This document shows positions 1,444-38,900 of a stretch of 64,000 nt of DNA, one piece after another. The notes under the pieces are model-generated. The model did not search any database and was not told the origin of the DNA. It saw nothing but the letters and a program-made list of their open reading frames with translations. How positions within the stretch are numbered: position 1 is the stretch's first letter; each line of letters opens with the position of its first letter. Both the position numbers and the translations under genes were made by a program. The stretch comes from Antechinus flavipes (lineage: Eukaryota). The DNA is taken from positions 2,108,001 to 2,172,000 of the forward strand of contig NC_067401.1 in NCBI RefSeq assembly GCF_016432865.1. Direction: 5' to 3'.

Positions 1444-12510
<11,067 letters not shown>

Positions 12511-13638: not shown

Positions 13639-13936
13639 NNNNNNNNNNNNNNNNNNNNNNNNNNNNNNNNNNNNNNNNNNNNNNNNNNNNNNNNNNNNNN
13701 NNNNNNNNNNNNNNNNNNNNNNNNNNNNNNNNNNNNNNNNNNNNNNNNNNNNNNNNNNNNNNNNNNNNNNNNNNNNNNNNNNNNNNNNNNNNNNNNNNNN
13801 NNNNNNNNNNNNNNNNNNNNNNNNNNNNNNNNNNNNNNNNNNNNNNNNNNNNNNNNNNNNNNNNNNNNNNNNNNNNNNNNNNNNNNNNNNNNNNNNNNNN
13901 NNNNNNNNNNNNNNNNNNNNNNNNNNNNNNNNNNNN
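13639..13936. other. Assembly gap (298 N)
   Basis: Run of N. Confidence 0.99.
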
Positions 13937-17909: not shown

Positions 17910-17966
17910 ATGGAGGCCGTCGAGAGAGACGAGCGGCGGCGCAAGGTGGAGGCCGGCCGGGCAAAG
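17910..17966 (+). CDS. PCNT: PCNT exon 1
   Basis: gaccATGG Kozak; donor AAG|gtaggg. Confidence 0.95.
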
Positions 17967-20900: not shown

Positions 20901-23900
20901 AGGAAATGTGGCAGGAGTAACTGCTTTGGGGAATTCCTGGTTAAGGGTTCCGCCTCAGCTAATGGAGGCCAAGCTTCTTGGCCCTGGGCTTCATGCTGGC
21001 GCCTCTGTGGGCTGCAGGGCTTCCCTTAAGGCGTGGGGAACGGGACTGCTCAGCTCAAATCTTACAAAGAGAAGCCTTTGAATTTTCCCCCTTTTTTTTG
21101 CTGAGGCAGTTGGGGTTAAATGACTTGCCAGCTCACACAGCTAGGAAGTGTTAAGTGTCTGAGGCCAGATTTGAACTCAGATCTTCTTGATTTCAGGGCC
21201 AGTGCTCTGTCCACTGCGCCCCCTAGCTGCCCTGAATTTTTCCTTTTTAAAAACAATCGGGAATGGGAACTAGACTGAATTTATTCCAAAGGAAAACAAG
21301 AAAACCTCTAAATGCAGAACTGTTGATAGCATCCCGAAATGAAAATGGCCACTTATCACTGCAGTCTTCTGGGCCTGTATATTGATGGCAGTTTCCTTAA
21401 TTTCAGCTATTTTGAATGGTCACTTTTCCTTTTATTTGCAGGGACTTGCAAGTAGTAGATGCGGAATAAATATTTGTGGGTTGATTTTATCTCCAACCAG
21501 TTTCCCTGCCGCCCATCCCTGATACATGAACATTTTATTCTCTTCCTTTGGGAAATTCAGGCAAGCAGCTCGCATGGGCAGTGGGAAAGTGGAGCTGTGA
21601 GTGGCACAAAGTGCCGTCCTGTCCCCGTGCCGGCGACTGGCAGAGGACGTATCCCGCCCCGCCGCCGTACCTGCTGCCGCTGCCATTTCTCTTTAGGGAG
21701 CAGCTGGAGATGTCATTGACTCTACTTTCTCCTTAACCCTCTTTATCCCTTAATTGATAAGGCTGAGAGGGAGCTTTGTCAGTGACAAACTCTACCCCCA
21801 AAAAGTTCCCAAAAGGCTGAGAGGAGGAATATTGAAAATTCTCTTTACATGTTATTGAAAAAAGGCAAAATATTATTAAGCCAGGAAAGGAAAAGATTTC
21901 ATCCTCAGAAGCTGCTGCAGAATTGCAGTGGACTTTCCTTCTAGACCTTGCAAGCAATGAATGGAAGGTTTCCTCTGGGCTGCCTTCCCTCTGCTAAAAT
22001 TCGCCCCTCGTACAAGGTTGCCCCTGTGCTTTCTGCAGAATTAGTTCTAAAGCCATCCTTGCTTCGCCGTTTGGCCGGGAACCCGCCAACGCCGGCCTGG
22101 GGGTCTCGGCGCTGTCCCCGCCGGCTCTTTCGAGGTGCTCGATGCGACGTGAGCTGGTGGCCAGTGTGTGTGAAACGCTGGTGTCTTTCTCTGTACAGGA
22201 CAGCGGGTCTTTCTTGGGCGTAGATCCCAGCGTGCCTGAAGTCCCGAAGACTCGGGGGGAGATGAAGGTGCTGGAAGAGAAGCCCGAGGGCAAGCAGGAC
22301 GACGCTGACCTGCCGAGTCAGCAGGCGGCCGAGTTTCCGCCGTGGCTGGCCTGGTGCTCGGAGGCCTCCCAGCTGCAGCAGGTAGGAGCCCGTCGCCCTG
22401 CAGAAGAGCCCAAGGGAGGGCGGGGGAGGGGGGGGAGGAGGGGGAGCACCTTCCCGGGACTCTTGGAGAGGCTGCGTCAGGTCTGTGATATTGGAGGAAA
22501 GAGAGGGCTCTGCTGAGGGTGGGAGGGTCCGAGGGCATGCAGGAGGCCCCGGGCGGTGGGAGCCAGCCTTGGTCTTGATGCCAGTCCTGTGGCTCTGGTC
22601 GGGGAAGGGCGCTGTGAGCTTTGGGAGGGGACGGGTCCTTCGTATAGCCTTTCACACTGGGATCGGGATGAATTTCTTTTGAGTAGTTGGCTTGTTTTGT
22701 TGAATGTAAGCTCCAGGAGGCCCAGGGCCGTCTTGCTTTGGCATTCGTAGCCCCAGTGCTTGGCATAGAACGTGTGTTTAGACATTTCATCTGTGGATTT
22801 CTTCATTGTGTTTGGCTGCTGTTGACAACAGCCTTTTCTTAGTGTAGAATAAGCGAAGGTCAGTGATGGGCCAGAAGCATGTTAGGCTGGTTCAGGCTTC
22901 ACCTGAGTGGCCGCTTCTTACAGTTTTCTGTCTTTGAGGATGCAGGCCGTGTGGGCCGGCGGCCTCAGTCGGGAGCGAATTTGGGATTCCCGCTTTCTGT
23001 TTCTGCGTCTCCCCTGCTGGCTCCTGAAGGGCAAACAATGCACCTTGGTTTTTGTTGGTTTTTCTTTTTTTCAAATAATAGCTTTTTTACTTTTCAAAAC
23101 ACGTGCAAAGATAGTTTTCACTCTTGCAAACCCTCCCCCTCCCTTAGACAGCAAGTGATCCAATATAGGTTAAACAATTCTTCTCTATATATTTACACGA
23201 TTATCGTACCTCACGAGAAAAATCAGATCAAAAAGGTGAAAACGCCACGTTGGGCTCCCCACTCGGTCCCCCCAGTCTCTCTCCATCACAAGTCTTTTGG
23301 AACTGGCCTGAATCAGCTCATTGTTGAGAAGAGCCACGTGCATCAGAACTGATCATCGTATAGTCTCGTTGTTGCCGTGTGCCATGATCTCCTGGTTCGG
23401 CTCATTTCCCTCAGCATCAGTTCCTGTCAGTCTCTCCGGCCTCTCTGAAATCCTTCTGATCATTTCTTACGGAACAATAATATTCCACAACACTCGTATA
23501 CTACAATTTATTCAGCCATTCTCCATGATGGGCTCTACTCAGGTTCCAGTTTCTGGCCACTACAAAGAGACCTGCCACAAATGTTTTTGCACGTGTGGGT
23601 CTTTTTTCCTCCTTTAAGATCTCTTTGGGATACAGGCTCAGTAGGAACACTGCTGGCTCAGAGGGCATGCACAGTTTGATCCAGTTTGCTCTTCACAATG
23701 GCTGGATGTATTCACAGTTCCACCAACAATGCATCAGAGTCCCAGTTTTCCCACATCCCCTCCAGCATTCAGCATTATCTTTTTCTGTCATCTTAGCCAG
23801 TCTGAGAGGCGTGCAGCGGTGCCTCAGAATTGCCTTAATTTAGAATGCATTTTGTTCTGGGGGTTATAGCAGGGGGCCCAGCTTAGCCATAGAGTAAATA

Positions 23901-26900
23901 CCTCAGTCATGGCAACTTGGGGAAACTGTCTCCTGATGACCCTCATGAGGAAGGAAAAAAATAGTCCCTGACACCATGGGGAGCGGCCATGGAGGTAGTG
24001 GTTGTTTGCTCTTCTTGAAGAGGACCGTGACGAGAGGGAGGGGAATTGGATTTAAGTGAGGGGGGCTGGGCAAAGTCACTGGTTTCCCCTCCAGAGCCGC
24101 CTGGGTCCAGTGGCCAGGTAGAGATCAAGCCGACGGGATGGCTTTGATTGCCACGGGAGAACTTGGCCTCTTTAAGCGAAGGTCTTCAGCAGTTTGGCTG
24201 AGCTTGTACCCCCTCCCCTCCCAGTCTCCAGCATCTGCTGAAGGGAATTGTTAAGGAAAGCACGTGGAATTCCCCCTGGGGGACCCATGGAGTGTCCGGA
24301 AGAGCTGGCCACCTCGTCACACTGTGACATGGGAAATCGTGCGGTAGAAGGAAGCTAAGCTCCCTCAAAAAAAAGCAGAGCAAAGCCCCCAAAACTCAGG
24401 GGCTGGAGGAGGCGGAAAGATGCTTCAGGCCTGCCTCTGTGGCTCCTGACCAGCCGCCCTGCCTCTGGATGCTGTTGCCGGGGGGACAGTCTCATGGCTG
24501 CCTCTTGCAAACTGAGGGACAGGAGGAGGAGAAGGGGCTTCCCAGCATTCCTGCTCCTCGGGGCATTTAGAAAGGCTTAAAATAGAACCTTTCTGGGCGC
24601 TTTAATCAATTAATTCACAAAGCCAGCATCCTAATAAAAGCACGGTCATTTGGCCATCTCTCTTAGACCAAAGGCAGTCATGGTACAGGGCTCGTGTGCC
24701 AGCCTTGGGCAGGCTTCGCTAAGAATTTTCCCCACCCGAGCCCGAAGCTGACCACGACGGCTTCCCCACCTGGTGCCTCTGAATCACAGAGTCCAGTGTC
24801 GTCATCCGTAGTGTCCTTCAAAGAGACTGAGCCTTGAAAATCAGGTCTGAAGAGGGCGACCTCCCCAAATCGTTGGTTATCATAATCATTTCTCTCCCTG
24901 TCACTGCCCCTCAAAGGATGGCAGAGCAGAAAGGGAAAGTGAGGAAGGAGAAAGCCAGGGAGGCTTTGCCGTGGGCTGGAGGGAGGCAGTTGGCGTCCGA
25001 AGGCAGGTGAGAGGAGCTTTGTGGGTCGCTCAGCGGGTGAGGCTGCCTTCTGAGGCGGGCGTCAGGCTCTCCCCGTGAGGGTTCCCTCCCTTGTTCCTAG
25101 AGCTCAGCCTGCCATGGCGGCTCCTACTATGCACAGATCCTGTTCACAATGGCTGCCTTTGCTGATAATTCTGAGGAGTGCCCAGTCTAATGAGGGTGGC
25201 AGCCAGGGCAGGGGAGCAGCAGGGGTACCTGCTCATGGTGGGTAGCGTCCGAAGGAAGTATTTCGCAGCTTCAGGGGAGAAGGATCGGGGCCCTCCTGGA
25301 GAGGAGCCTGAGGAGGCCGCACAGGGAGGGAGGCCGCGGCTGGGGAGGCGTCTCGTAGTTGGGCTCGAGGCGGTGAACAGCCGAGCTGTCTCTGAGGGTG
25401 GAGGGTGGTCTGTGGAGTGAGCCAGGGTTCAGGGGCAGGGGGTGAGGAGGATGATTGCCGGGTGGTGAGCCTGAGGCTGTGGGTGGATATCCTCCATGTG
25501 TGGTGTTCTGTGGGGAAAGAGACTATCTCTGAATATCCTTCGTCTCCTTGGTCAGAGACAAGGAATGGTGGCCAGGGCCTGAAACCCTCGCTGGAGCTCT
25601 CTGGGACCCTGGCAGATGCCAAGATTGCAGCTCTGGAGCTGGGAAGGACCCTCGTCCTTCGCCCGGAGAAGCAGCCCCCTTCTTTGCCCCGCTCTGATTG
25701 GCTTCCCCTCCCCCTGCACAGTCTGAAAAGGACACCCTGGGAAAAGGGGCTCGGTGGCCTCTGGGGACAGCCTTCTCGTGCTTCCAGGAGCGGTTCCTTC
25801 CAGGCTTTTCCCTGCCCTTGGGTGCGGACCCCCACCTCTTGGGGCTGGATGAGAGTCCTTTACTCTAGACCTGTGGCTCGGGCCTGCGTGGTCTGACAGG
25901 GCGGGGGAGGTCTCAGTCCATGGTCAGTGCCGGCTCCGTGGGGAGCCGAGAGAGGGTCGCTGGGGCCCTGGGCTGCCCAGTGGGCCGGCTGGCATTGCTG
26001 CTCCAGTCATTGCAGGGTCAGATCTTTGAAGAGACCTCAGGGAACTGGTTCGCTGCTGACTCACTGCCCGCACCTGAGCATGGAAGGGGAGAGAGGGGCT
26101 GCCCAGAGATGCCCCGGGTCAGGCGGTTGGGGAAACTGAGGCCCAAGGGGGAAGTGGCAAATGGCTGCAGGCGCACAGGGGGCGGGTAATTCTTCCGGTG
26201 GCCCTTGGCCTTCTCTGAAATGATGCGGCCGGAGGAGACTGAGCCGCTGGCCCTGGGGCAGGGATCGGTGGGCTCTGGCCTGGCCCTGCCTTCATTTTTC
26301 ATGTCAATCCCGGGGATCCCTTGATGCTTCGCTGGTATTAGAAGTTAGAAGCGTGTTTGTGGGCTCCGGAAGGATGGAAGGGCCCAGGCCCATCCAGACG
26401 AATATGGCTAGCAGAGCCCGAGGCCTTGGAGGAGGCCGTCTTGGCAGATTGTGGCCCTGCAGGGCCTAAGTGCGGGCTGGGTGGCTGAGACCCGGCCCAG
26501 CCTTGAAGGGGGGAGGCTCGGAGGCCTTGTCTCTGACCGGGGGGCCTCCCACGAGGCTCCTGCTACTGCTGGCGGGCAGAGCTCTGAAGCGCACCCCTGT
26601 GGTCTGAACATGGAGGAGGCTCAACCGTGTATCGCCCCGAGGGGGCCTTTTCTCCCCCCTGAAAGCTCTCTGTTACGCATTGGCCCCTTGGTAGGAATTA
26701 GCGATGGCAGTCCGGGAAAGAGACAAAATCATTGTCCGGCTGAGCAGTAACCTTCAGCAGGCGAGGCAGAGTCACCAGCATGTCCAGCAGGAGGCGCTGC
26801 TCCTGGCCACTCAGATGCATCATTTGCAACATCAGTTACAAGAGGTAATTTGCCGTGGAAGAACATTTTGGATTTTTTTTTTCTGAGGCGATTGGGGTTA

Positions 26901-29900
26901 AGTGACTTGCTCAGAGTCACACAGACAGGAAATGTTAAGTGTCTGAGGCCAGATTTGAACTCGGGTCCTTCTGACTTCAGGGCTGGTACCGTCTCCACTG
27001 CACCACCCAGCTGCCCTAACATTTTGATTTTTAAGAAAAAACTTTTTTATAGAGGTCGGCTCTTTTCCTTTGGAAAAAAAGTTTTGGTTTGCAGCTTCCT
27101 GCACTCACTGCCGCGGCCCAGCCTTCCTCGGCCCACATGGGGTAGGGGCAGACTCCAACGGGAGGCCTGCTGCGTGACGTCATGTGGACTAAGGTCAGGC
27201 TGTAGCCCTCTAAGGGTTATGGGGCACGCAGCAAATACCCTCTGCCCTCTGAGTAACCCTGTGAGGTAAGGCTACAGTTATCCTAGCTTAGTGGGAGGAG
27301 GTTTCCCTTCCTGTGCTGTCGACACAAGGCTTTGTTTCTTCAGGTGCTTTAAGGTCCCTCTCTGCCCCTCCTCCCTGTTCCCTTCCACTTGTTTGTTCTC
27401 CCTTTCCCTTTGGGGTTTGGCTCACTAGTTCCTTTTTCTGTCCTGCTTTTATCTGGCATACGATTCTCCCCCTTTTTTTCTTCCTAGTAACTCTGACCCG
27501 AATTCTTCCTCCTCTCCCCTTTAACTAGTTCTGTTCATCATGTGGCTCACATGACTCAGAAATCACTACTTCACAGAGGAGGAAGCTGAGGCAGGTGGAA
27601 GTGAAGCGACTTGCCCAGAGTCGTGTAGCTAGTAAGTGTCTGAGGCTGGGTTTGTTCTGACGTCCTTTCCTTCTCACTCCTCACTTTGAATCATTTCGTA
27701 TAAATATAAAAAAAAAAAATGACAATCCTATACTAAAACTTGTTCATCTGTTCCCTGATCTCTGGAAATCCCCTTGATGTCCACTTCTTAGTCCCTCCCA
27801 AAAGATCTGCTCTAGATATTTTTGTGCATATAGATCCTTTTCCTTTTCCTTTTCCATTTTTTTTAAACATATGAATGGAAAGTTCTGCAACTTTTCCTTT
27901 GAACTTTTACTCGTGGTTTTGGTGGATCACAAGGTACGCACAAGTTTGTTGTTCTTTGGGTGTAGTTGCAGCTTTTTCTCCAGATGGTTGGACTAGTTCA
28001 CAACTTCACACAGTGCATTAGTGTCCCGGTTTCCCCACATCCTTCCCAGTTTCCTTTTTTGGTCATCTTCACCAATCTAATAGGTGTGGATGCTTTCATT
28101 TGCATTGTGTTCATTAGTTGGCAGCCTTTTCCAAAAAGGATTTCTCTTCTTTCCTTTCTGTCTCCTCGTTCTCTGACTCAGGACCCTTAGTTCTGTGTTG
28201 TCCTCACATTACAGAGTCCTGGTTACAGAGTCCTTCATCTCCTCAGGGTTGGACTCTTTATTCATAGGGGCCTGAACTTGTTTTCGGGATTTCCTTCTAT
28301 TGTTACTATTTTTCCTCTTGCTCTATCTGCTTATTTTCAAGTTCTGAGATGTTTTCTTTCCGAGACCTTGGTGCTTTCAGGGATTTTCACCTCATTTTCC
28401 CTTATTGTTCACTTTCTGACTCTGCCCCCTGTTCTGTGGTTTCCTTGGAAGCTGGATCTCAGTCCTCAGCCTTGCCCCACACTGGGCCGCTCCTAGCAGC
28501 CCAGCCCAGGCCCTTTCCCCAGCTGACTTCTAGATAGTCAGAAATGACCCCGCCGTGGTGAGTGCTGCACAGCCTCCTGTGCGCGGGCCTGTCCGGCTCC
28601 CACCATTCTTCGTTCTCTGGCCCAGCAGCAGCTGTTTGGAGAGGGGCCGTGCCGGCCGCTGACGTTACATGGGCCGTCCGCGGCAGCACTGTTTGTCTGT
28701 CAGGGCCCGAGCAGACTAGACTCCCTTGGTTCGGGGCACGGGGTAGAAGGGGAAGACGGGAAGATGATATCCTAGAGTTGGAGACGGCCGAAATGGATTC
28801 CTTTCTGGTGCGTGATTTCTGTTTTGGAGAGATTTGAGAGCTACAGGAATTGGAGAAAACATCTGGTCCTACATCTTGTTGCTCATGTAACCCAGAAATC
28901 ACTATTTTACAGAGGAGGAAGCTGAGGCAGGCCCAAGTGAAATGACTTGTTCAGAGTCATATAGTTAGTAAGTGTCTGAGGCTGGGTATGTTCTGAGGTC
29001 CTCCTGGTCCTAGGCCTTGCGCTCTGTCCTGGGCCTCCCGGCTGCCTCAGCACTCTTGTTAAATGCTTATTCTGTACCAGGTTATACGTTAAGTGGAGAG
29101 CAAGAAGTGTTTTCCCCTGCAGAGAGTCTGGGAAAGCTAGAGGGTGAGTCTCCACGTGAAGGGCTTTGAATGCCAAACCAAAGATGTGAGATGGATGGTA
29201 GATCCTAGGCCTTGGGCACTGATGACTGACTGGAGTAGAGTCAGGGCGAGAGAAGGACCCAGGACGAGGCTGGCAGGGAGGCCCGAGCTTATCCGAAGGG
29301 GCCTTAGAAGAAACCTGGCAGAGGGTAAGGGGGCGTGGGGCTGAGGGCTGAAGCTTGGCTTTGAGGCCTAGAGGGGGATGGTGAGCACAGTTCTCAGCAG
29401 CTGTGGGTTTGGGCTCCCAGGTAGGAGCTCTCTGAGTGTTGGCCAGGAGTGCAGGAGCAGAGCTTTTATTGGGAGGAATTAGCCAGCCTGCAGCTTGGGG
29501 CACGTGATGTCCCTGGGCCCGGAGAGACCAGGAAGAAGCAGTCAGAGCCGTGGCAGGAGGGTTATCCAGCAGGGGAAGGCGGTCCCTCATCCACTCTCAG
29601 GGTCTGCCGGACTGGACGGCCGAGCCAGGAGCGGCTGCGGGGAGGGTCTCGTTGGCACAGAGGGCTGGACGCAAGAGGAGGAGAGGCCCCTGGGCCGGGG
29701 AGTTTTTTCCAGAAGCCGCTCCCACTCACTGCTGTGTGACCCTGGTCACAGCCCTCCCCTCCCTGGCCCCTTCCAGGCCCAAATTGAGAATCCTGAAGAT
29801 TCTGAGGAACAAATGGGGGTGAAGCGGAGGGAGCAAACAACGGGAGCGTGGTCCCGAATTGAGTTGGATGAAATGGACATCTTGAGGCTGCTAGGAGCCA

Positions 29901-32900
29901 CCGGGGGTAGCGTGTTGAGGGGTGGGATGGGAAGGCCCTGGCCTCAGACACTTCTGCTTCCGGTTCCTCATCCCTAAAGTGGTTGCGGTGTCAGCACCTA
30001 CCTCTTAGGGTCATTGGGAAGATTAAAGGAGCCAGAACGTGCTGAAGCTCTGGCCGGCCTGAAAGAGCTGTGGGGGTATTCAAGGCAAGGTGGGATGGCC
30101 AGGTGTTGGGCCTCAGACATCCAATATGGCCCGGATGGGATGGTCACAGAGACCTTTCCCACTCTGTCTGGGACTCTCAGAGCAGGAAGGGCGTGAGGGA
30201 TCCAAGGGAGTGGTGGAAGAGCAGTGAGGTGATCTGAGGGATCAAGAGGGGGCTTTCATTGCAAGGACCTTAGCCTCCTCTAAGGGAGAGGGGAAGCCTT
30301 TGAGAATGGGGGAGGATGGGAAGGGTGAGGACCACATCCTGATCGGGACTCACCGCTGGGTAGAGCAAGCACTCTCTCTGCCTTTACACAGTTTGCTCTG
30401 ATGTGTGAGGAGCTATTGGGGATGGGGGAGAAGGCAGGCACCCCGGTAGCTTCCTTCTTTGGAGAGTTCACCGGCCAATCACTTGGTGTTTAGAATAGTG
30501 AGCTTCTGAGGAGCAAGATGCCGGCCAAAGGAGGCCCGTTACAGCCCCGGCCCCTGGCAGCAGCCTCTCTGCAGTGCCCGCCGGAGCCGAGCGCTCCCCT
30601 GCAAGGTCCATTCCACAGCACTCCCCTGCAGCTCCAGTACCACAGGGCCCAGGATTTGGAGACACAGATAGCAGCGAATCAGCAGGTGAGGAAGGTTGGA
30701 GGCTCCCTCAGGGGCCTTGGCTGGAGCAGCCCCTCTTGTTCGAAGAGGCTCTTTTCTGTGGGGAATCAAAGAGCTAGAGCGGCCCTCGTGACTGTACAGG
30801 GTTCAGTTGGGACTCTGCAGGACCCGCTAGGCCTCATGTCCTACAGGTGCTGGCTGCCTGACCTCACCCTGCTGAGGCCTTCCCTTCTCTGGCTTAGCAG
30901 ACGCCCATCCCATGCTGATGGAAGGTGGGGGGGATGGTGTGTCCTCCCTGAGAGGTCACTGGAGTGACTACATCACAGGTCCAATGGTCCCCAGCCGGCT
31001 CTCCCTAGTCACTCTGGTTCTGTTGGAGCAGAGTTACCCCATGTAGATTAGAGAACCAATTCCTTGTTTGTGTTCCAATTAGAATTTTATTCTCCCAGGG
31101 CCTTCTTAGTGCTTAATAATTGGCTAAAGTGCTTTGTTTCCAGAAAGGGACAGTAAATTCTTTTGTATTCAAACAAGGGAATTGTCTCTGCAGACTTGGG
31201 AAATCTCCAATTAGGAATTGTCCCCCTTGTGACTAATTGGAAGGAAAAGGCCTTATCTATACCAAGGTCTGATCAGAATTTGCCTGGAGTCATTTGGAAA
31301 TCATTGACTCTGGTTTTCCTTAACTTCTCCATCATCCTACATAATTTGAGACAATTTTGTGGTGATGTTGGAACTTTTTTGCTACTAAAAATTAACTTTC
31401 TAAACAAAAAAGGCCCCGGTGGGTCTAGCCTGTGCTGACTTATATTTAAGTTAACATTAAGTCCGGTGAAATAATAACTGATTGTTTTTAATTAATGTGC
31501 AAATTAGCATGGCGAGTTTTCTTCTTAGTTGATATGTAACATTTTATTTTTAAGAATGTCAAAGATAAAGAGAAAATTTCTGCCGAGATGGAAGAACATT
31601 TGAAAAGTGCCGTTGAGGAGCTGTCATGGGTGGTCAGAGAGGAAGAAGGGCTGAGCAGCAGCGTGCGAGACCCTTTACATCTTGTCCACGAGGCCGTAGT
31701 TTCACCAGAGCAAGGTGTTTCAGTGAAAGATGCAGAAGTCAGACTGTTAAACCAGGAAAAGCGAGAGTGTGTTGAGGAGTCCCAAGAACATCCCCTAAAG
31801 GAGGTTTCTGAGCTGCCTCAGGATCCGAAGCGGGAGCCTGGGCTGGGGATCACTGAGGTGAAACGGGCTTGTGCAGACATCGTGGATGGGACATACAGGA
31901 AAGCAGGTGGGCCCACAAGAGCGGGAACCCTTCCACTTAGAGGCCCGAGAGACAGGGAGCCACAGAGCCTCAGTGGAGTTAATGCCAATTTAAACGATCA
32001 ACTCCGTGAGTTGGATCTTCATCAAAATGGCTCGTGTGCAACACCAGAGAGCCAGACGGCAGCTTTTCAGGAGGAAGGAGATGAGACTGAGTGGGTGGAG
32101 GAAGCTGTGCTGGAGGATCTTAAAAGGAAGTTTTCACCTGCAGAGAAACACTTGGAGAAAGCTTGGGACTCCGAGGGTGATGAGCAAAATGGGGGTGAGG
32201 AAATGCAAAAACTCAGCTCCCGTGTGCAAGGAGTGAATGGGGAGCTGCTCCAAGAATCTGAAAAGAGCAGAAACCTCCAGCTGGAGGATGTCGGGGAAAT
32301 CACTTCCCGTGAGCAGGAGAGAGCCTTGCAAGGTGCCTTTGGTGCCCAGAAAGCTGAACCGGAGAGGCTGCGTAGTAAGGTAGGCCTTCAGTCGGGAGAG
32401 CCTCCCTGCCATGAGTTGGAATATCAAAATGTTCTCAAAAGGTTCAGTTTGGAATCTGAAGAAAACCGATGTTTAAAATTTGACATGAGTGAGGAGGACG
32501 AAACGATTGAAGATGGCCCCCTTGGTGGGGAAGCGCCAGTGGAGGGAGTGATGTTAGAGGTAGTCACTGGTGACTTGATGGAAAAGTACCTGGTCTGCAG
32601 CGAACAAGATCATTTGAGTGTCTCTGAGACACCCGAGTATTTTGACATAGAAACTGCTTTTCAGAGTAAATCCGAGAGAGGGAGTCTGGGCTTCGTATCA
32701 GACGAGCTAATCATCGGCTTTGATGAAAAAATGGATTCCGGTGACTTGTCAGAAGGATTGTTTGCTGACCCGGTGACAGACGTGCAGTACGGCAGGGGCT
32801 TCTCTCGTGGAGACTTATGGGAGTTGATGGACAAAGATAAGGTTTACTTGGGAGAGCGGTGTGGGAAGTTAAATCAGCTACCTATAGAAAAGAAGATGGC

Positions 32901-35900
32901 CCTCAAGAATTTCTCTCAGGAGATTGAAAAGGCTGAGGAGACATGGTGGGAGGGGGGCCACAGCCTCCCAATCGAACTGAACCAGGAGGGGGAAAGCTCA
33001 TTTTCTTGTGCTGAGATTGTGCCAAGGCTGGAGGAAGAAGCTGAAAATCCAACGGGAGCTGTGGCTGCAGCTGGCGGCGTCCCACATTCACAAGGCCCAT
33101 CTTCAGCGTCTGCTCAGGGTCTTCTCTGGCCTGGGATGGTCGAGATCTGCCCTGTGGAAGTGGAGAGGGGAGCAGGAGAGAGGACTTCCGACTCGGCGCA
33201 TCTGCACAGTCAGGAGGAGGACAGGCTGCAGGGCCAGCTGGATGCCCACCAAGGCAGAAGCCAAAGATCTGCCGGGCGCCTGGGTCAGAAAACCACTCTA
33301 GAGGAGGCTCTGCTGCAGGAGGTGGAGACCCTGAAGGCCGAGATCGCTACTAAGGAAAGTCTGTTTACCCAAATTGTCAAAGAAAAAAATAATTTGGAAA
33401 AAATGTTTTCTAAAGATAGAGAAAATCTTGAGGAAAACATATTCGAACTGACTGAGAAAATTAAATGCTTGGAAAAAGAACAGCGGTGTGAAAAAATAGA
33501 ATTAGTGGGACGGTCTAAATTGGCTCCTTCAGAGGGTCAGAAACCTGATGCTGAAATAGAGGCAGAAGACTCAGATATCATGCAAGCAGAGAATAACCCG
33601 ATTCCACCAATGGTTTCCTTGAAAAATGCTCTAGCAGACCCCCCGTGGCGGCCGCAGGGGGAAGCACAGAAAGCTGCTTGGGCTCTGGAGGACGTCTGGT
33701 CGGAGCTGAGCAGCCGCTATGAGAAGCAGATGACTCAGTTGAAGCATCAGCAGGAGGCCGAGAGGGCCCAGCTGAAGCGGGAGCACCAGAAAGAGGTAGG
33801 CTGGTGGGGCGCCGAGGGCATCCGTATTTTCCTAGGTGCTCCGGGTGGAGCTTTTGAACAGAGCCCTCTCCTTGTCCTTCATCTTATTTCTAGGTGGAGG
33901 CCATGAGTGAACAGATGAAGGAAGAGCTGGGCAAGCGGCAGCACAAGTGGGACGAAGAGCGGAAAGAACAGATTGGCATGATTAAGCAGGTATTCCCGTG
34001 ACCGGCGCGGTCCTTCCTCTTGTCCGGGAGCCGTCCTCCGGTGGCCACGCCGGCCTGGCCGCCTCGCAGGCGCAGAATGAGGGGCTGAGGACCCTGCCCC
34101 AGTCTGTGAAAAGCTCCTAACGGCTTTGGTTCAAAACAAATGGCTATCGTAGCGTTGGGTTTTACGTCACCTAGATTTCATTCCTTTGTCAGAGAGCTAG
34201 TCCATAGGACAAAGACTTTTTTTTAAGAAAGGAAGAAAGGGGAAGGGAAGAAAGCATTAGCCACGGGCTTTTAAGGATCTGGGTCTAGAGATAGCGTTCC
34301 CCCTTGAGGCTCTGGCCTCTGCGCGGGAGTAGGTCTCACAGCCCTTCCGCTCAGCCCACCTTGTTCTTTGTAGTTTCAGACATTCACTTCTGACTGTTTG
34401 TGTTTTATTCTCCTTGTCGTATGTCTTTCGTCCTTCTGGTTGTCCTGCCATCCCTCTGCTCTCTCGCTGCTGTCTTCCGGACTTCCCTCAGTCTCTCCGT
34501 GCTTCTTTGCCTTGTCAGAGTCACCCTTTCTCGGAGCACAGCAATATCCACTCACAGTAAGGCTCTGGGGAGTTTAGCCATTCCTCAAACAACGGGCATC
34601 TACTTTGGTTCCGGTTCCGCACAAGACAGAGCGGCAATCACGATAAAGCAAAGCTACCATTTTGGGGAATGAAAGGAAGAGCTTCTGCCCAAATCGAATG
34701 AATGAATCTGGGATAAGGAGGGAGACAGATGATGGGAAAAGATTCTGTGTCACGGTTGTCTGAGGCCTTTGGTATCCAGCATATGTTGGGTATCCAAGAT
34801 ATCTCTATCTGTATGTGTATCTATCTGTACCTATATCTCTCTAGCCAGCAAATGTGTGTTTGTGCTCGTGTGCATTTGTGACCCCAGTTAAAACAAGCCC
34901 GATACTCCCCCTGAAAATTGGCTATGGTAACGAGATGGGAGTGGTCATTGTTGGGAGGGGTCCGGAAGCCTGATAAGCTGAGGCTTGTCTGAGCGGTGAG
35001 GTAGAGGAACTGTTTTGGAGAGCTGTTTATATTGTGCAAATGAGCCAGAGATTGTACTTAGGAGGCACATGCCCCAAGGGCTTGGAGAAGAGGGACGTCC
35101 CCATGGATGTCTGATATGGGCAGACTTTTTCTGGGGGCCAATAATGTTGCCATTCACTGGGCACTTTTTTGATCCCCAATGGGATTTTCACGGCCGATCG
35201 GACGGGAGGGAGGGATTGTTTCAGTGTTGGTCAGTCTGGACTTGGACAGATCGCAGCCAGCTAAGGATGAGGTGGTTAGGCCGGGATTCTTCCTTTCGCT
35301 TGGGATGCGTGGCCTCGCCCATCCCTCAGTGTTGCCTTTCCTCATCATTATTTTCTGCTTCTGGATGTGCGGCTTTATTGTGGCGCAGCCAGTGAAGCTT
35401 CTGTGATGATTCTTGTTGTCAAAAGAGGGTTGCTCAGTCCAGCGTCCACTGATTGTGCTCAGCTTGGGCTCTGGCTGACTTGATTTTGGAGGAAATTTTT
35501 TTTTCCTGAATTGGGGTCGATACTGACAATTGGATTTCTCTCTCCTGTGTTGAGCCTTTTCCATTTCCCCCGCTTTCCCTTCCCAAGCTTTTCCGATATC
35601 AGGTGCTTTTGAAGTCGTGGGAGAGGAAGTGGGGAGCTCCGGCGCCCGGTCATGGAGTCTTCTTGTCTGTCTTGTTGTAGACCTGTGGTTGGGGGCTGAG
35701 GGCAGACTTTGGATGCCAAGGGGTCCCATGGCCTTCCTCCATCCAGTGAGGAGGCCGGCCTGACGCATGCCGCGGCTCGTGGCCAGCCCCGAATCTGTGA
35801 GCCCACAGTGACCGGTGTCATGCCCAGGGCTGGCCAAGGATGAACTCTCTCCTTCCATACTTGGACCCAGGCCTTTCTTAAAAAATTTGATTTGCTCCTT

Positions 35901-38900
35901 TTTTTCTTGGTCACGGCCAGATTCTAGGTGTTCTTTAAGCACATTAGCGTGCATGCTTGTGGACTTTGTGGAGTTTGTAGCTTCCCTTTTTTCGAATCGT
36001 CTCTGTCCGGTTTCAGAGGCGGCGTTCCCCAGCGGACCACATATATTGGATTTGCTATTAAAGCTTTGGCGGCCTCTCAGGGCCAGGCTCTGGACTGGCG
36101 GAAACAGTCTTCGCTCGTGGGAAGTGACGGCCTCTGTCCCTTCTTTGCTGAAACCGGGCATTCACAATGATCGCTTTTCTCTCTCAAGATTCACGAGCGA
36201 GAACGTGATCGGGAGATTGCGGAGCTGGTCCGTAAGCATCAAGAGGAGCTGAAGCAGCTCCGGGAGGGACTTCAGAGCAAGCACCAGCAAGCGATGAAGG
36301 AGCTTCAGCAGCAGCTGGAAGCCTTCCATGAAACAGAGATGCAGCAAGCCCAGCTCCAGGCACAGGTAGGCTTGGGCCCGGCCCACACCGCGGGTCCTGG
36401 GCAGGGCGCTGTCCCCTTAGCCAGGGGTTCTGGAGGTTCCCTTACCTGCAGGCTTTCTTTGAGGGCCTATCCCTGAACAAGACTCCCCTGTGCCCCCCAC
36501 GCGACACGTCTGCCTCGAGCTTTCCTTCAGAACCCCACCTTGCAGAGCTCGGCCTTCCCCCTCTGAAGAAGCTCTCATGGGTGTCTTTGTGATTTTTCTG
36601 CCCACAAGCCCACAAAAAATCTTGGGGGTCGCTCAGTCTTCTGGTCTGATCCCCTTTACCCCATGGGGTTCCTGGCTTCCTTCAGGACATGGCCTGGCCG
36701 GCTGAGCCTCCCCCCTCTTCCGGGGGTGTCTCCTCCCAGTCTGTTTGGACCCCCTTCAGAGTGTGTGTGTTAATATGGGGGGGAAGGGATGTGTGCACGT
36801 TGGCTTCTGGCCCCTGGTGCTCAGCCTGGCACCCAGGGTGTTTCTGCTCAGTCAAGAGCCCCATGCCCTGGACAAGCCAGCCTTCTCCTCTGCCACGTCC
36901 TCCCCTTTGCAATGGCCGGCTCCCACTGAGGCTGAGCCTGCTTCTTGCTTCTTGCCCAAGGTCTTTCTCTCCAGCTCTTCCTCTGCTCTCCCCTTCTTCC
37001 TTGACCTTCATCCTCTCCTGCCTCCTCACCAGGTGGCCAGACCATTTTGGCTTCAGCCTCGGCCTCTGGCCTTTCAGTGAGGGGCGCACCTTAAATTCTG
37101 GACAAACCGGCTGCTCTGACCCTGCCGTCCGAGCTGCTCTCGAGCCTTCTCCGGCAGCACCCTGGAGAGCAGCTGCTTTCCTCAGGGAGTTTCATCCAGA
37201 GCCTTAAACGCAGCAGGAACTTGTCCTTCATGAGACCCTCAGGCCGTGGGACAGCATGGCCCAGAACTGGCTGGTGTGGAGGCCTGAGGAGGAGGAGGCT
37301 CTGGAAGGGGGTGGGGGGAAGCAAGAGAGATAGAAGTGCCCTGAGCCCGGAGAGGTCTGCTAAGGAGGCCGCTTCAAAGCAGGGACCACGGGGGGCCGAC
37401 CTGATCACATCCCCTGGCCAACGTTCCTGGGGAAATCGGGCAGGTGCTCCGGGAAGTGCTGCTTGCCCAGTCATTTGGCCCAAGCTGAGGAAGGGCCTGC
37501 TCCCCTGTGCCTGGCCTTGAGCGAGGCTCTTGTGGGGTGAGTCATTCTCTCATGAGGAGGGCCGGCCGAGAGAATGTTGGAAGGTGGAAAGGAAGGCGAG
37601 CCCGAGAAGGTGTCCAGAAAGGGGAGGCCGCAGGTCACAAAGGAGCCCATTAATGAGGCTGCTGCTGAGAAGTGGGAGAGCTGCAAAGAGGCGACCTGCA
37701 GGGGGCCTGGCCCTCGGCCCCCCGGGATCCCCCGCTGCAGCCACACGCAGGACCATCCGGCACTGGCAGGATCTGTGTTGGCCAATGCCTCTTTTCTGCT
37801 GCTTGTAGACCCTGCACAGCCTGGAGCTGGAGGCTCTGCGCCTGAGCCTGAGCAACATGCACACGGCCCAGCTCGAGCTGACCCAGGCGAACCTGCGCAA
37901 GGAGAAGGAGACGGCCCTGGTGGAGCTCCGGGAGATGCTCAATGACAAGCGGGCGCAGGAGGTAGCCCTCGTCCAGAGCCGCCAGCAGTTTGAGCTGGAG
38001 CACATCAAGGAGCAGCACCGCAAGGAAAAGGAGGACATGGCCTTGGAGCACCAGCAGGAGCTAGGTATGGGCTCCCGTCCCCGCCCTGGAGGTGCCAGGG
38101 AACCCCCTGCTGCTCTTCTCTGCCCCCAGGGGCCCTTGCCAGCATTCGTGGGTGGCTTCCTTCCTCGGGACTCCCAGGACTGGGGTGTGTTCACTGTGGG
38201 TAGCCAACAGTTTGTTATCCATTTGCTGTTCCCTTCTAAAAGGGAGAGGCCCTGGCTAGACCTCGAAGCCCTGGATCCTGGGTTCCATATCCCAGGAGGA
38301 CCCTCTTGGCGCCTTCCCGGTTCCTTCTGGGCCTGACTCCTCGAGGAGCCGGCCATGTTGTGGCCTTCTGTCTGCCTTCTCATGCAGAGCAAGGGCGACG
38401 GCTGGGATCTCCTTTGGAGGCTCCCTTTGTTCTCTGTCTTTGTGCCCAGGCTGAAGTTGCCCAAGAATGGGCATAGTGGGGGCTTCTTCCTCCAATGTGG
38501 AGAGACCACCATGGCGTCATGCTAGTGTTCTCAGTGTTGCCCATCCCTCGGTTTTAGCATCTGGTCTGAATTTACCATTCGGAGTCCCCGTCCTGCCCCG
38601 TGGGACCAGCAGGACCAGCGCCTGTCCACTGTCCGCGTACTTGGAGACGCTCCCGCGGCCAAATCCCTTCCTCTGAACTCCGGGCCCGGCCCTCCCGGCA
38701 GCCCCCTTCCTTTTCCCCCCAAAGGCCGAGGGCAGGACAGAGTCTGCCGTGTGAGGCCGCGTTGTGTTCAGAGTGGCTTCTCTCTTATTTCAGCTGCCTT
38801 GGAGAAAAAACTGGAACTAGAAGTGGAGGCTCACAGCCAGACATTGGAGGTAGCCCCAGCTGCCTTTTTTGTCTTTGTTGGGGAGGGGGTACAGCACTGG

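What the first reader, a model, noticed from the sequence alone, without database searches (positions are those of the whole stretch)
22199..36365. Marsupial pericentrin keeps an AKAP9-like N-terminal block of about 1000 aa, including a 2241-nt exon
Seen: six phase-0 exons (183, 150, 192, 2241, 96 and 177 nt; 3039 nt) lie between exon 2 and the human exon-5 equivalent, where human has only about 450 nt (recalled). Exon 4 ELAMAVRERDKIIVRLSSNLQQAR followed by NSELLRS parallels recalled AKAP9 EFEAAIKQRDGIITQLTANLQQAR...ASETLRN, and AKAP9 also has a giant exon of about 2.4 kb shortly after. Known: PCNT and AKAP9 are PACT-domain paralogs, and the AKAP9 N-terminus mediates GM130/Golgi and gamma-TuRC association. 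Inference: ancestral architecture lost in eutherians, possibly giving marsupial PCNT Golgi-targeting or extra scaffold functions.
Basis: partly seen in the sequence, partly recalled or inferred. Interest (0 to 1): 0.72.

Follow-up and report, generated by a model that had tools for sequence, protein, structure and literature searches.

The report
Ancestral AKAP9-like block in marsupial pericentrin
The six extra exons are real, spliced pericentrin exons: the worn-down marsupial copy of an ancient N-terminal module shared exon for exon with the sister gene AKAP9, already annotated in other marsupials, reptiles, birds and a sturgeon, and probably lost in placentals.

Summary
All six phase-0 exons (183, 150, 192, 2241, 96 and 177 nt) sit at the stated places with AG/GT borders. 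RNA-type contigs join exon 5 to 6, 6 to 7 and 7 to 8 at exactly those borders.

The gene is pericentrin (PCNT) of a dasyurid-like marsupial. Its exons are 88-98% identical to the Sarcophilus protein.

The block is not a marsupial speciality. RefSeq PCNT models of nine marsupials, many turtles, crocodilians and two birds carry it. A sturgeon PCNT gene has the same exon plan (150 / 165 / 2217 nt).

The AKAP9 likeness is real:
- The recalled AKAP9 motif is exact.
- A profile-profile comparison aligns the first ~600 residues collinearly (E 1e-37).
- Two fish AKAP9 genes have exons of 156 / 198 / 2805-2868 nt at the matching positions and in the same phase.

In the window's own sequence, only exon 4 is still recognisably AKAP9-like. 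Exons 3 and 5 and most of the giant exon are rich in proline and glycine and predicted disordered.

Loss in placentals could not be tested directly, because no placental PCNT sequence was obtained. Golgi targeting is untested and looks doubtful for marsupials.

The exons were already annotated; the evolutionary reading is a modest novelty.

The parts
17910..17966 (+). PCNT exon 1 coding part (MEAVERDERRRKVEAGRAK), donor GT directly after ..GRAK
   Evidence: The exon ends at the same place as fish AKAP9 exon 1 (..AGKAK|gt). It lies inside the AKAP9-like N-terminal motif.
20130..20330 (+). PCNT exon 2 (LAQFRQRKTKSD...), 201 nt
   Evidence: AG acceptor and GTAAGC donor. It is homologous to AKAP9 exon 2 (LA(Q/E)(F/Y)RQRK).
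22199..22381 (+). e3, 183 nt, phase 0; Pro/Gly-rich (18%)
   Evidence: (90% identity to Sarcophilus). In the profile-profile alignment it lines up with the stretch that AKAP9 exon 5 encodes in fish. Its 3' end is seen joined to e5 in an X21 contig.
26695..26844 (+). e4, 150 nt, phase 0; 50-residue helix-type segment free of Pro and Gly, carrying the RDxII..L..NLQQAR motif; cassette exon
   Evidence: Its best match in all 17 AKAP9 proteins lies at residues ~160-245 (42-48% identity, 38-43 bits; next best at most 29 bits). It scores 29.7 bits against an AKAP9 N-terminal HMM, E 8e-7 at Z 1e5. The same 150-nt exon exists in sturgeon PCNT. AKAP9 exon 6 is 156 nt. e4 is skipped in an X21 contig.
30494..30685 (+). 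e5, 192 nt, phase 0; Pro-rich in dasyurids
   Evidence: An RNA-type contig joins 30685 to 31555. It is the positional equivalent of AKAP9 exon 7 (198 nt; LQ+AGETLRN..). It is shorter in wallaby, possum and bilby (37 aa) and in sauropsids and sturgeon (~55 aa).
31555..33795 (+). e6, giant exon of 2241 nt (747 codons)
   Evidence: It aligns end to end with the PCNT giant exon of marsupials (46-88% identity), turtles, crocodilians and birds (25-28% identity, E 1e-48 to 1e-74). The sturgeon giant exon (2217 nt) is ~25% identical to it in alignment A1. Contigs of X21 and X22 cover it with spliced ends.
31555..32460 (+). 5' part of e6 (aa 1-302), orthologous to the part of the PCNT giant exon that is homologous to AKAP9 residues ~316-770
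   Evidence: Giant-exon HMM against AKAP9: HMM positions 7-344 match AKAP9 316-680 (tetrapods) or 509-770 (fish), E 4e-14 to 2e-5; reversed controls gave 0 hits. The hhalign alignment ends at ..SLESE. The window's own sequence here gives no AKAP9 hit by itself.
32572..32604 (+). DLMEKYLVCSE: short motif conserved in all PCNT giant exons, absent from AKAP9
   Evidence: One search finds it in every PCNT from sturgeon to marsupials and in none of 17 AKAP9 proteins. K344, Y345 and L346 are invariant. It lies in a region of low predicted confidence.
33211..33795 (+). 3' part of e6 (aa ~553-747): conserved long helix or coiled coil
   Evidence: AlphaFold predicts helices 553-655 and 698-746 with pLDDT 82-94. 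This is the part most conserved against sauropsids. P0004 matched here in the exhaustive search.
33894..33989 (+). e7, 96 nt, phase 0
   Evidence: GT..AG joints to e6 (X21, X22) and to e8 (X22).
36189..36365 (+). e8, 177 nt, phase 0 (IHERERDREIAEL...)
   Evidence: 97% identity to Sarcophilus and 54-61% to sauropsids. It is kept even in the short turtle and turkey isoforms. A joint from e7 is seen in X22.
37809..38064 (+). Next exon (TLHSLELEALRLSLSN...), where the strongly conserved PCNT rod begins
   Evidence: 88% identity to wallaby. Weak collinear AKAP9 similarity resumes downstream of this exon.

Best explanation
The six exons are genuine coding exons of pericentrin in a dasyurid-like marsupial. 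They are spliced into mRNA.

Origin. They are the marsupial copy of an old N-terminal module that PCNT shares with its paralogue AKAP9. PCNT e3 / e4 / e5 / giant e6 correspond to AKAP9 exons 5 / 6 / 7 / giant 8, and all junctions checked are phase 0. The module therefore predates the PCNT-AKAP9 split. It is retained in sturgeon, turtles, crocodilians, birds and marsupials. It is very probably deleted in placentals; that last step is inferred, not shown here.

State in marsupials. The module is eroded. Four parts are still helical and conserved:
- e4, a 50-residue helix that matches the start of AKAP450's first coiled coil. That coiled coil (aa 159-463) is the GM130-binding and dimerising AK1B domain.
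- The last ~200 residues of e6.
- e7.
- e8.
Exons e3 and e5 and about 550 residues of e6 are acidic, rich in Pro and Gly, and predicted disordered. One invariant short motif (..LMEKYLV..) is embedded in that stretch.

Most likely mode of action (inferred). The block is a long flexible acidic spacer between the conserved N-terminal tip (exons 1-2) and the PCNT rod. It carries a few docking or dimerising elements. Its content is tuned by alternative splicing: e4 is a cassette exon, and relatives have predicted isoforms that skip e5 or e6+e7.

Retained Golgi (GM130) targeting is possible but less likely in marsupials than in sauropsids, which keep the whole coiled coil.
For: Real exons and splicing.

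Orthology across vertebrates:
- nine marsupials including koala, turtles, crocodilians, kiwi and cuckoo cover 93-99% of wallaby residues 100-1120.
- the giant exon aligns end to end with the sauropsid one.
- the sturgeon gene has exons of 150 / 165 / 2217 nt.

AKAP9 paralogy:
- the only non-PCNT hits to crocodilian e4+e5 among 627 candidates are 17 AKAP9 proteins.
- e4 has a single best site in every AKAP9, and the recalled motif is exact in P0073.
- a PCNT N-terminal HMM gives one collinear domain, positions 5-609 = AKAP9 2-672, 165 bits. Reversed AKAP9 gives 0 hits.
- an HMM of the giant exon alone matches AKAP9 at ~316-680, E down to 4e-14.
- hhalign probability 99.95%, E 1.2e-37, 576 aligned columns.
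- fish AKAP9 exons are 48 / 264-273 / 48 / 57-60 / 150 / 156 / 198 / 2805-2868 nt. Exons 6 and 7 each start with NNNCAG, so a second AG 6 nt further in would give 150 and 192 nt.

Erosion in marsupials:
- only exons 1-2 and e4 of marsupial PCNT hit an AKAP9 HMM, while turtle PCNT hits in three collinear domains (125 bits).
- Pro+Gly is 10-20% in the window, against 0-5% in the turtle giant exon and 2% in AKAP9 159-1029.
- 456 of 747 residues of e6 have pLDDT below 50, with confident helices at 1-30, 420-466, 580-650 and 710-747.

Splicing variants: e3 joined to e5; isoforms without e5; short isoforms without e6+e7.

AK1B function: PMC3105543.
Against: - No placental or monotreme PCNT sequence was obtained, so the timing and the reality of the loss rest on indirect evidence. 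That evidence is the absence of such hits in a word-seeded search, published length (human 3336 aa, 47 exons; PMC8457697) and my own memory of the human and mouse N-termini.
- The window's giant exon shows no AKAP9 similarity on its own. The link runs through orthology to the sauropsid and sturgeon exon.
- HMM E-values used an arbitrary Z of 1e5, and coiled-coil composition inflates such scores. Reversed-sequence controls and collinearity argue against an artefact.
- The 192 = 198-6 match for e5 is probably coincidence, because other PCNT lineages have e5 of about 111-165 nt.
- The RNA evidence is from assembled contigs of two small runs whose library type is not on record. Inclusion levels are unknown.
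- The proposed function is inference only.
Confidence: 0.85

Rival explanations
1. The block is a clade-specific insertion into the pericentrin N-terminus, a marsupial or lineage novelty, as the published 169-orthologue alignment describes N-terminal differences.
For: [quoted passage not shown] The exhaustive HMMER search with e6 returned only four representatives.
Against: The same exons occur in turtles, crocodilians, birds and sturgeon. They are paralogous to AKAP9 exons 5-8, with matching intron positions and phases. The thin result probably reflects clustering at 50% identity: one search listed no turtle protein, although one search found turtle long isoforms at 336 bits.
Confidence: 0.03
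2. Nothing was lost in placentals. Equivalent exons exist there but are unannotated, alternatively spliced or too diverged to be found by the searches used.
For: No placental sequence was examined. Word-seeded searches miss diverged relatives: one search missed even marsupial PCNT. Predicted short isoforms that skip e6+e7 exist in turtles, turkey and marsupials, so a short form is not proof of gene-level loss.
Against: One search found turtle short isoforms through e4 and e8 alone (E 1e-29) but not one of the many placental PCNT entries. Human PCNT is 3336 aa, against about 4100-4800 aa for the long marsupial and sauropsid models listed. From memory, human and mouse PCNT run from exon 2 almost directly into LELEALRLSLSN.
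Confidence: 0.1
3. The marsupial block still works as in AKAP450: e3-e5 and the start of e6 form a dimeric coiled coil that binds GM130 and takes part of the pericentrin pool to the cis-Golgi.
For: e4 aligns with the start of AKAP450's first coiled coil. Together with e5 and the 5' part of e6 it lines up with much of AK1B (aa 159-463), which binds GM130, targets the Golgi and dimerises. e4 is 66-98% identical among marsupials that carry it and 56-62% identical to turtle and crocodilian e4.
Against: Only 50 of the ~305 AK1B-equivalent residues remain helix-type in the window. e3 and e5 have 18-20% Pro+Gly, and e6 residues 33-163 are predicted disordered. e4 itself is skipped in some transcripts. 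Which AK1B residues contact GM130 is not known to me.
Confidence: 0.12
4. The block is a tolerated relic. It stays in frame only because it lies upstream of essential pericentrin sequence, and its residues have no specific role.
For: These are the least conserved exons of the gene: 54-64% identity to wallaby, against 61-90% for the later exons. Much of the block is predicted disordered. Predicted isoforms of relatives skip parts of it.
Against: There are invariant islands (KYL motif, e4, e6 C-terminal helix, e8) conserved from sturgeon to marsupials. The length of about 740-830 residues is kept in all lineages (input).
Confidence: 0.2
5. The AKAP9 similarity is a coiled-coil composition artefact.
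For: Both proteins are long Glu/Gln/Leu/Lys-rich coiled coils. BLAST without composition correction gives many secondary hits.
Against: Each AKAP9 has one dominant, collinear hit. Reversed AKAP9 sequences give no hits. AKAP9 is the only non-PCNT family returned among 627 candidates. Intron positions and phases match.
Confidence: 0.03

Closest known systems
Annotated long pericentrin isoforms of other marsupials (e.g. Sarcophilus harrisii isoform 5, P0012; Sminthopsis crassicaudata X3, P0013; Notamacropus eugenii X15, P0001)
   Same: The same six exons in the same order. Identity to Sarcophilus is 88-98%, including the 64-residue form of e5.
   Different: A different species. Wallaby, possum and bilby use a shorter e5 (37 aa). 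The sequence is otherwise orthologous, so the exon set itself is not new.
Sauropsid and sturgeon pericentrin long isoforms (turtles P0023/P0024/P0028, crocodilians P0039/P0040, kiwi P0046, cuckoo P0050, Acipenser P0062)
   Same: e4, e5, giant exon and e8 are all present. The giant exon aligns end to end. The sturgeon gene has exons of 150 / 165 / 2217 nt in phase 0.
   Different: Their block is an almost uninterrupted coiled coil (Pro+Gly 0-5%) and is clearly AKAP9-like over about 580 residues. The marsupial block has 10-20% Pro+Gly and is mostly predicted disordered.
AKAP9 / AKAP450 / CG-NAP N-terminus (AK1, aa 1-1029; AK1B, aa 159-463, the GM130-binding Golgi-targeting coiled coil; Hurtado et al. 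2011, PMC3105543)
   Same: Paralogous N-terminal tip, e4 motif (RDxIIxxLxxNLQQAR), following exon and giant exon. The intron positions and phase are the same to within 2 codons. Profile-profile E is 1e-37 over 576 columns.
   Different: It is a different gene: the window's downstream exons are PCNT. Only the first ~40% of the giant exon is homologous. The KYLV motif is specific to PCNT. GM130 binding of any PCNT block is untested. The marsupial coiled coil is broken.
Human pericentrin / kendrin (3336 aa, 47 exons; PMC8457697)
   Same: Exons 1-2 and everything from LELEALRLSLSN onward correspond. This comparison rests on memory and on the wallaby alignment, not on a human sequence from a tool.
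   Different: The human protein is about 800-1450 residues shorter than the long marsupial and sauropsid models seen here. As far as I recall it lacks e4-e8, but this was not verified with a tool-supplied sequence.

Membership tests
Pericentrin (PCNT) orthologue | Exons collinear with and most similar to annotated PCNT, not AKAP9 | tested here: met
   Wallaby PCNT P0001 residues 21-2270 map collinearly on window 20133-61331. The exons are 88-98% identical to Sarcophilus PCNT. AKAP9 similarity is limited to 42-48% identity over e4.
Pericentrin (PCNT) orthologue | C-terminal PACT centrosome-targeting domain (PF10495) | not testable with these tools
   The window ends at about residue 2270 of 4318 of the wallaby protein. 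The orthologue P0012 has PACT at 4360-4438.
AKAP9-type N-terminal module (paralogous exons 1-8) | Specific sequence match of e4 to the AKAP9 motif EFEAAIKQRDGIITQLTANLQQAR | tested here: met
   Single best site in all 17 AKAP9 proteins, 38-43 bits. 29.7 bits against an AKAP9 HMM, with reversed controls negative. AKAP9 is the only other family found with crocodilian e4+e5.
AKAP9-type N-terminal module (paralogous exons 1-8) | Collinear homology extending beyond e4 into the giant exon | tested here: met
   Met at the level of the PCNT family profile: HMM 5-609 = AKAP9 2-672, giant-exon HMM 7-344 = AKAP9 316-680, hhalign E 1.2e-37.
AKAP9-type N-terminal module (paralogous exons 1-8) | The window's own e3, e5, e6 and e7 detectably AKAP9-like on their own | tested here: not met
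   No hit for e3, e5, e6 or e7 against the AKAP9 N-terminal HMM. e8 scored 7.8 bits, E 3.
AKAP9-type N-terminal module (paralogous exons 1-8) | Shared exon-intron plan (positions and phase) | tested here: met
   Fish AKAP9 (L002, L003): 150 / 156 / 198 / 2805-2868 nt, phase 0. The acceptors of exons 6 and 7 are followed by a second AG at +6. PCNT window: 183 / 150 / 192 / 2241 nt. Sturgeon PCNT: 150 / 165 / 2217 nt. Exon 1 ends after ..AK in both genes. Tetrapod AKAP9 genes were not examined.
AKAP450 AK1B-type Golgi-targeting domain | Continuous ~300-residue dimeric coiled coil | tested here: not met
   In the window the longest stretches free of Pro and Gly are 13 residues (e3), 50 (e4), 20 (e5) and at most 31 in the first 600 residues of e6, against 154 in monkey AKAP9 159-463. 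e6 residues 33-163 have pLDDT below 50.
AKAP450 AK1B-type Golgi-targeting domain | Binds GM130 and localises to the cis-Golgi | not testable with these tools
   This needs cell biology. Only the AKAP450 data are available (PMC3105543).
Ancestral block lost in placentals | Present in outgroups of mammals | tested here: met
   Turtles, crocodilians, birds and sturgeon.
Ancestral block lost in placentals | Absent from placental (and state known in monotreme) PCNT | tested here: inconclusive
   No placental or monotreme hit, although turtle short isoforms were found through e4 and e8 alone. No such sequence could be fetched for a direct test. Published human length is 3336 aa.

The most novel reading that the evidence does not exclude
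The PCNT/AKAP9 ancestor carried an N-terminal GM130-binding, Golgi-targeting coiled coil followed by a giant exon, and non-placental pericentrins still use it. On this reading pericentrin of fish, sauropsids and, in weakened form, marsupials would sit partly on the cis-Golgi. The purely centrosomal placental pericentrin would be a derived, truncated state. Marsupials would show the intermediate, eroding stage. The invariant ..LMEKYLV.. motif would be an unrecognised pericentrin-specific docking site that placentals also gave up.
Probability: 0.12. Interest if true: 0.7.

Novelty: new member of a known kind. Interest (0 to 1): 0.4.

Why it matters
Almost all pericentrin cell biology is done on human and mouse proteins. 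If those are N-terminally truncated derivatives, part of the ancestral function is invisible in the standard models. That part would be whatever is shared with AKAP450's Golgi-binding AK1 region.

The exon-for-exon correspondence with AKAP9 extends the known PCNT-AKAP9 relationship from the C-terminal PACT domain to the N-terminal ~600 residues.

It also gives concrete constructs to test in chicken, zebrafish or marsupial cells: e4, e3 to the 5' part of e6, and the KYLV motif.

For annotation, it shows that these exons are ordinary and expected in marsupial genomes.

Tried and rejected
- Pfam scans of the exon products and of the N-terminal 1400 residues of three PCNT proteins found nothing. 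The local Pfam copy lacks PF27598 (AKAP9_coil_N) and PF27603. I therefore could not place the precomputed AKAP9_coil_N hits listed for some PCNT proteins.
- The PDB sequence search gave only chance hits.
- The exhaustive HMMER search with e6 returned four representatives and no AKAP9. This is uninformative about absence, because long isoforms are hidden behind 50% cluster representatives.
- The word-seeded search with Sarcophilus e4 found only marsupials. Repeating it with gharial e4+e5 brought in AKAP9.
- Gene look-ups failed for AKAP9 proteins P0070, P0072 and P0064, which are not the longest products. The turtle PCNT P0032 gene is too long to be served.
- A search of the supplement of PMC8349556 for species names was blank. 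A literature search for the size of AKAP9 exon 8 found nothing useful.
- I considered and rejected four ideas: that the gene is AKAP9, that e6 is a chance ORF, that the 192-nt length of e5 is ancestral, and that the AKAP9 match is compositional.
Each exon was searched by reference, and natural full-length proteins of relatives served as proxies.

Full report
**What is in the sequence**

Between 22199 and 36365 the + strand holds six open, phase-0 exons with AG acceptors and GT donors:
- e3 22199-22381 (183 nt)
- e4 26695-26844 (150 nt)
- e5 30494-30685 (192 nt)
- e6 31555-33795 (2241 nt)
- e7 33894-33989 (96 nt)
- e8 36189-36365 (177 nt)

A 747-codon open frame has a chance probability of about 3e-16.

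Upstream lie exon 1 (CDS 17910-17966, MEAVERDERRRKVEAGRAK|gt) and exon 2 (20130-20330). Downstream, the exon TLHSLELEALRLSLSN... starts at 37809.

Each was analysed by reference, and natural full-length proteins of relatives served as proxies.

**Which gene it is**

An exhaustive HMMER search with the e6 product found four representatives. One is tammar wallaby 'pericentrin isoform X15' (P0001, 4318 aa), which matches all 747 residues at positions 263-1026.

P0001 maps collinearly on the window from 20133 to 61331, covering its residues 21-2270. Every one of the six exons is present in RefSeq PCNT models:
- Sarcophilus: 88-98% identity
- Sminthopsis: 75-94% identity
- Wallaby, brushtail possum, Dromiciops, bilby and opossum (e4 was not found in the Dromiciops model), and koala

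So the window is PCNT of a dasyurid-like marsupial, and the exon set is already annotated in relatives.

**Are the exons in mRNA?**

Contigs of four public runs were laid on 30440-36420.
- X19 and X20 cover exons and introns evenly and are genomic DNA. X19 is identical to the window and is probably its source.
- X21 (same organism) covers only the exons.
- X22 (about 99% identical) covers the exons deeply and the introns only thinly.

The RNA-type runs carry GT..AG joints at exactly the predicted borders: 30685>31555 (X22), 33795>33894 (X21 and X22) and 33989>36189 (X22).

At the e5 acceptor, the X21 contig continues upstream with the last 27 nt of e3, so e4 is skipped there. In X22 the consensus of two loose ends is explained at 30 of 30 positions by a mix of the e3-end and e4-end letters. 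Both forms therefore seem to exist, which makes e4 a cassette exon.

Koala models also lack e4. Some sauropsid models lack e5. Short turtle, turkey and marsupial models lack e6+e7.

The library types of X21 and X22 are not on record. Contigs do not give inclusion levels.

**The block is old, not a marsupial speciality**

Wallaby residues 100-1120 find PCNT of eleven turtle genera, three crocodilians, kiwi and cuckoo, at 27-34% identity with 93-99% coverage for the long isoforms.

The window's giant exon aligns end to end with theirs, with E from 1e-48 to 1e-74. e4 is 56-62% identical to turtle and crocodilian e4.

A sturgeon protein (P0062, with a PACT domain) also carries e4, e5 and the giant exon. 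Its gene (L004) has exons of 150, 165 and 2217 nt, all phase 0.

The published remark that the pericentrin N-terminus shows 'clade-specific insertions' (PMC8349556) is therefore better read as retention versus loss.

**Is the block AKAP9-like?**

Yes, for roughly its first half.
- With gharial e4+e5 as the query, the only non-PCNT hits among 627 candidates were 17 AKAP9 proteins from fishes, geckos and a monkey.
- The window's e4 has one dominant match in every AKAP9, at residues ~160-245. Identity is 42-48% and the score 38-43 bits, against at most 29 bits for the next best site.
- A PCNT N-terminal HMM (13 marsupial and sauropsid proteins plus sturgeon) matches AKAP9 in one collinear domain, positions 5-609 to AKAP9 2-672, at 165 bits. 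Reversed AKAP9 gave no hit.
- An HMM of the giant exon alone matches AKAP9 at 316-680 in tetrapods and 509-770 in fishes. This covers HMM positions 7-344 of 822, with E from 4e-14 to 2e-5 at Z 1e5.
- hhalign of the two N-terminal alignments gives probability 99.95% and E 1.2e-37 over 576 columns. The alignment ends at ..SLESE, residue 302 of the window's e6.
- Weak collinear similarity resumes downstream of the block.

The remaining ~450 residues of e6, together with e7 and e8, have no detectable AKAP9 counterpart.

**Gene structure agrees**

Two fish AKAP9 genes (L002, L003) have exons of 48, 264-273, 48, 57-60, 150, 156, 198 and then 2805-2868 nt. The junctions around exons 5-8 are phase 0.
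- Exon 6 encodes LQ+DFEAALKQRD...QFQQ.
- Exon 7 encodes LQ+AGETLRN....
- Both begin with NNNCAG, so a second AG lies 6 nt further in. Without those 6 nt they measure 150 and 192 nt.

PCNT e4 is 150 nt both in the window and in sturgeon. The 192-nt match with the window's e5 is probably coincidence, because e5 is 165 nt in sturgeon and shorter in other marsupials.

Exon 1 ends after ..AG(K/R)AK in both genes.

**The marsupial copy is eroded**

Against an AKAP9 N-terminal HMM:
- Turtle PCNT scores 125 bits in three collinear domains.
- Marsupial PCNT scores only through exons 1-2 and e4.
- The window's e4 alone scores 29.7 bits, E 8e-7.
- The window's e3, e5, e6 and e7 score nothing.

Composition tells the same story:

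| Segment | Pro+Gly |
|---|---|
| Window e3 | 18% |
| Window e4 | 0% |
| Window e5 | 20% |
| Window e6, first 600 residues | 10-16% |
| Turtle giant exon | 0-5% |
| AKAP9 159-1029 | 2% |

AlphaFold2 on e6 with a 16-sequence alignment gives a mean pLDDT of 50, and 456 of 747 residues fall below 50. Confident helices appear only at about 1-30, 420-466, 580-650 and 710-747.

One short motif inside the disordered part, (D/E)(I/L)(L/M)xKYL(V/A)(S/C)(T/S), is conserved in every PCNT from sturgeon to marsupials and is absent from AKAP9.

**Function**

AKAP450 residues 159-463 (AK1B) are its first coiled coil. This fragment binds GM130, targets the Golgi and dimerises. AK1 (residues 1-1029) also binds p150glued and microtubules (PMC3105543).

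PCNT e3, e4, e5 and the start of e6 align with this region. A Golgi link for non-placental pericentrin is therefore a fair hypothesis.

In marsupials, however, only the 50 residues of e4 remain of that coiled coil, and e4 is optional. I consider a flexible acidic spacer with a few docking or dimerising elements more likely. All of this is inference.

**Loss in placentals**

This could not be tested directly. The indirect support is:
- One search recovered turtle short isoforms through e4 and e8 alone, but no placental entry.
- Human PCNT has 3336 residues and 47 exons (PMC8457697), against about 4100-4800 residues for the long models seen here.
- From memory, human and mouse PCNT pass from exon 2 almost directly to LELEALRLSLSN.

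**Verdict**

The block is ancestral and AKAP9-paralogous. The loss in placentals is unverified. The functional idea is untested and weakened for marsupials.
- The exons themselves are known from annotation. The exon-for-exon PCNT-AKAP9 N-terminal paralogy, and the reading of placental pericentrin as the truncated form, are modestly new as far as my literature searches show.

Noticed in passing
window 32572-32604 (e6 aa 340-350): DLMEKYLVCSE: a short motif with invariant K-Y-L. It is conserved in the giant exon of every PCNT seen, from sturgeon to marsupials, and absent from 17 AKAP9 proteins. It sits in predicted disorder and is a candidate docking motif of unknown partner.
   Followed up: partly
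window 26695-26844 (e4) and junction 22381>30494: e4 behaves as a cassette exon. One RNA-type contig (X21) joins e3 directly to e5. The X22 loose ends look like a mix of the e3>e5 and e4>e5 forms. Koala PCNT models also lack e4.
   Followed up: partly
L004 (Acipenser sinensis contig VSKV01000297.1), exons at 4639-4788, 6219-6383, 6629-8845: A sturgeon protein labelled 'UNVERIFIED_CONTAM hypothetical protein' is a pericentrin with the e4 / e5 / giant-exon plan (150 / 165 / 2217 nt). Its model starts inside the e3 equivalent and looks N-terminally truncated.
   Followed up: partly
L002 8240-8395 and 8474-8671; L003 11984-12139 and 12357-12554: Fish AKAP9 exons 6 and 7 both begin with NNNCAG (encoding Leu-Gln). 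A second AG 6 nt downstream of the annotated acceptor would give exactly the PCNT exon start. This could reflect acceptor sliding or tandem acceptors.
   Followed up: no
Sequencing-run output for window 31555-33795: Eighteen runs of 'organism A', including metatranscriptomes, each hold exactly 0.19 of the sampled words of the giant exon. The cause could be a relative's conserved part or a shared contaminant.
   Followed up: no
window 35154-36161 (- strand), intron between e7 and e8: The 335-codon antisense ORF noted by the scan lies in this intron. X22 has only thin cover there (depth about 3, contig 35414-35985), like the other introns, and X21 has none. There is no sign of a separate abundant transcript in these runs.
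   Followed up: partly
window 2400-3600 and 8900-9800; N run 13639-13936: The GC-rich region upstream of PCNT has long tandem repeats that read open in several frames on both strands (e.g. [15 protein letters not shown] units). It also contains a 298-nt assembly gap, which was left untouched.
   Followed up: no
P0004 / L001 (Logan SRR30607950 contig, 5108 nt): An 825-residue single-exon ORF is a pericentrin giant exon. It most resembles the kiwi sequence around the KYLV motif, so it is probably avian. The organism was not identified.
   Followed up: no
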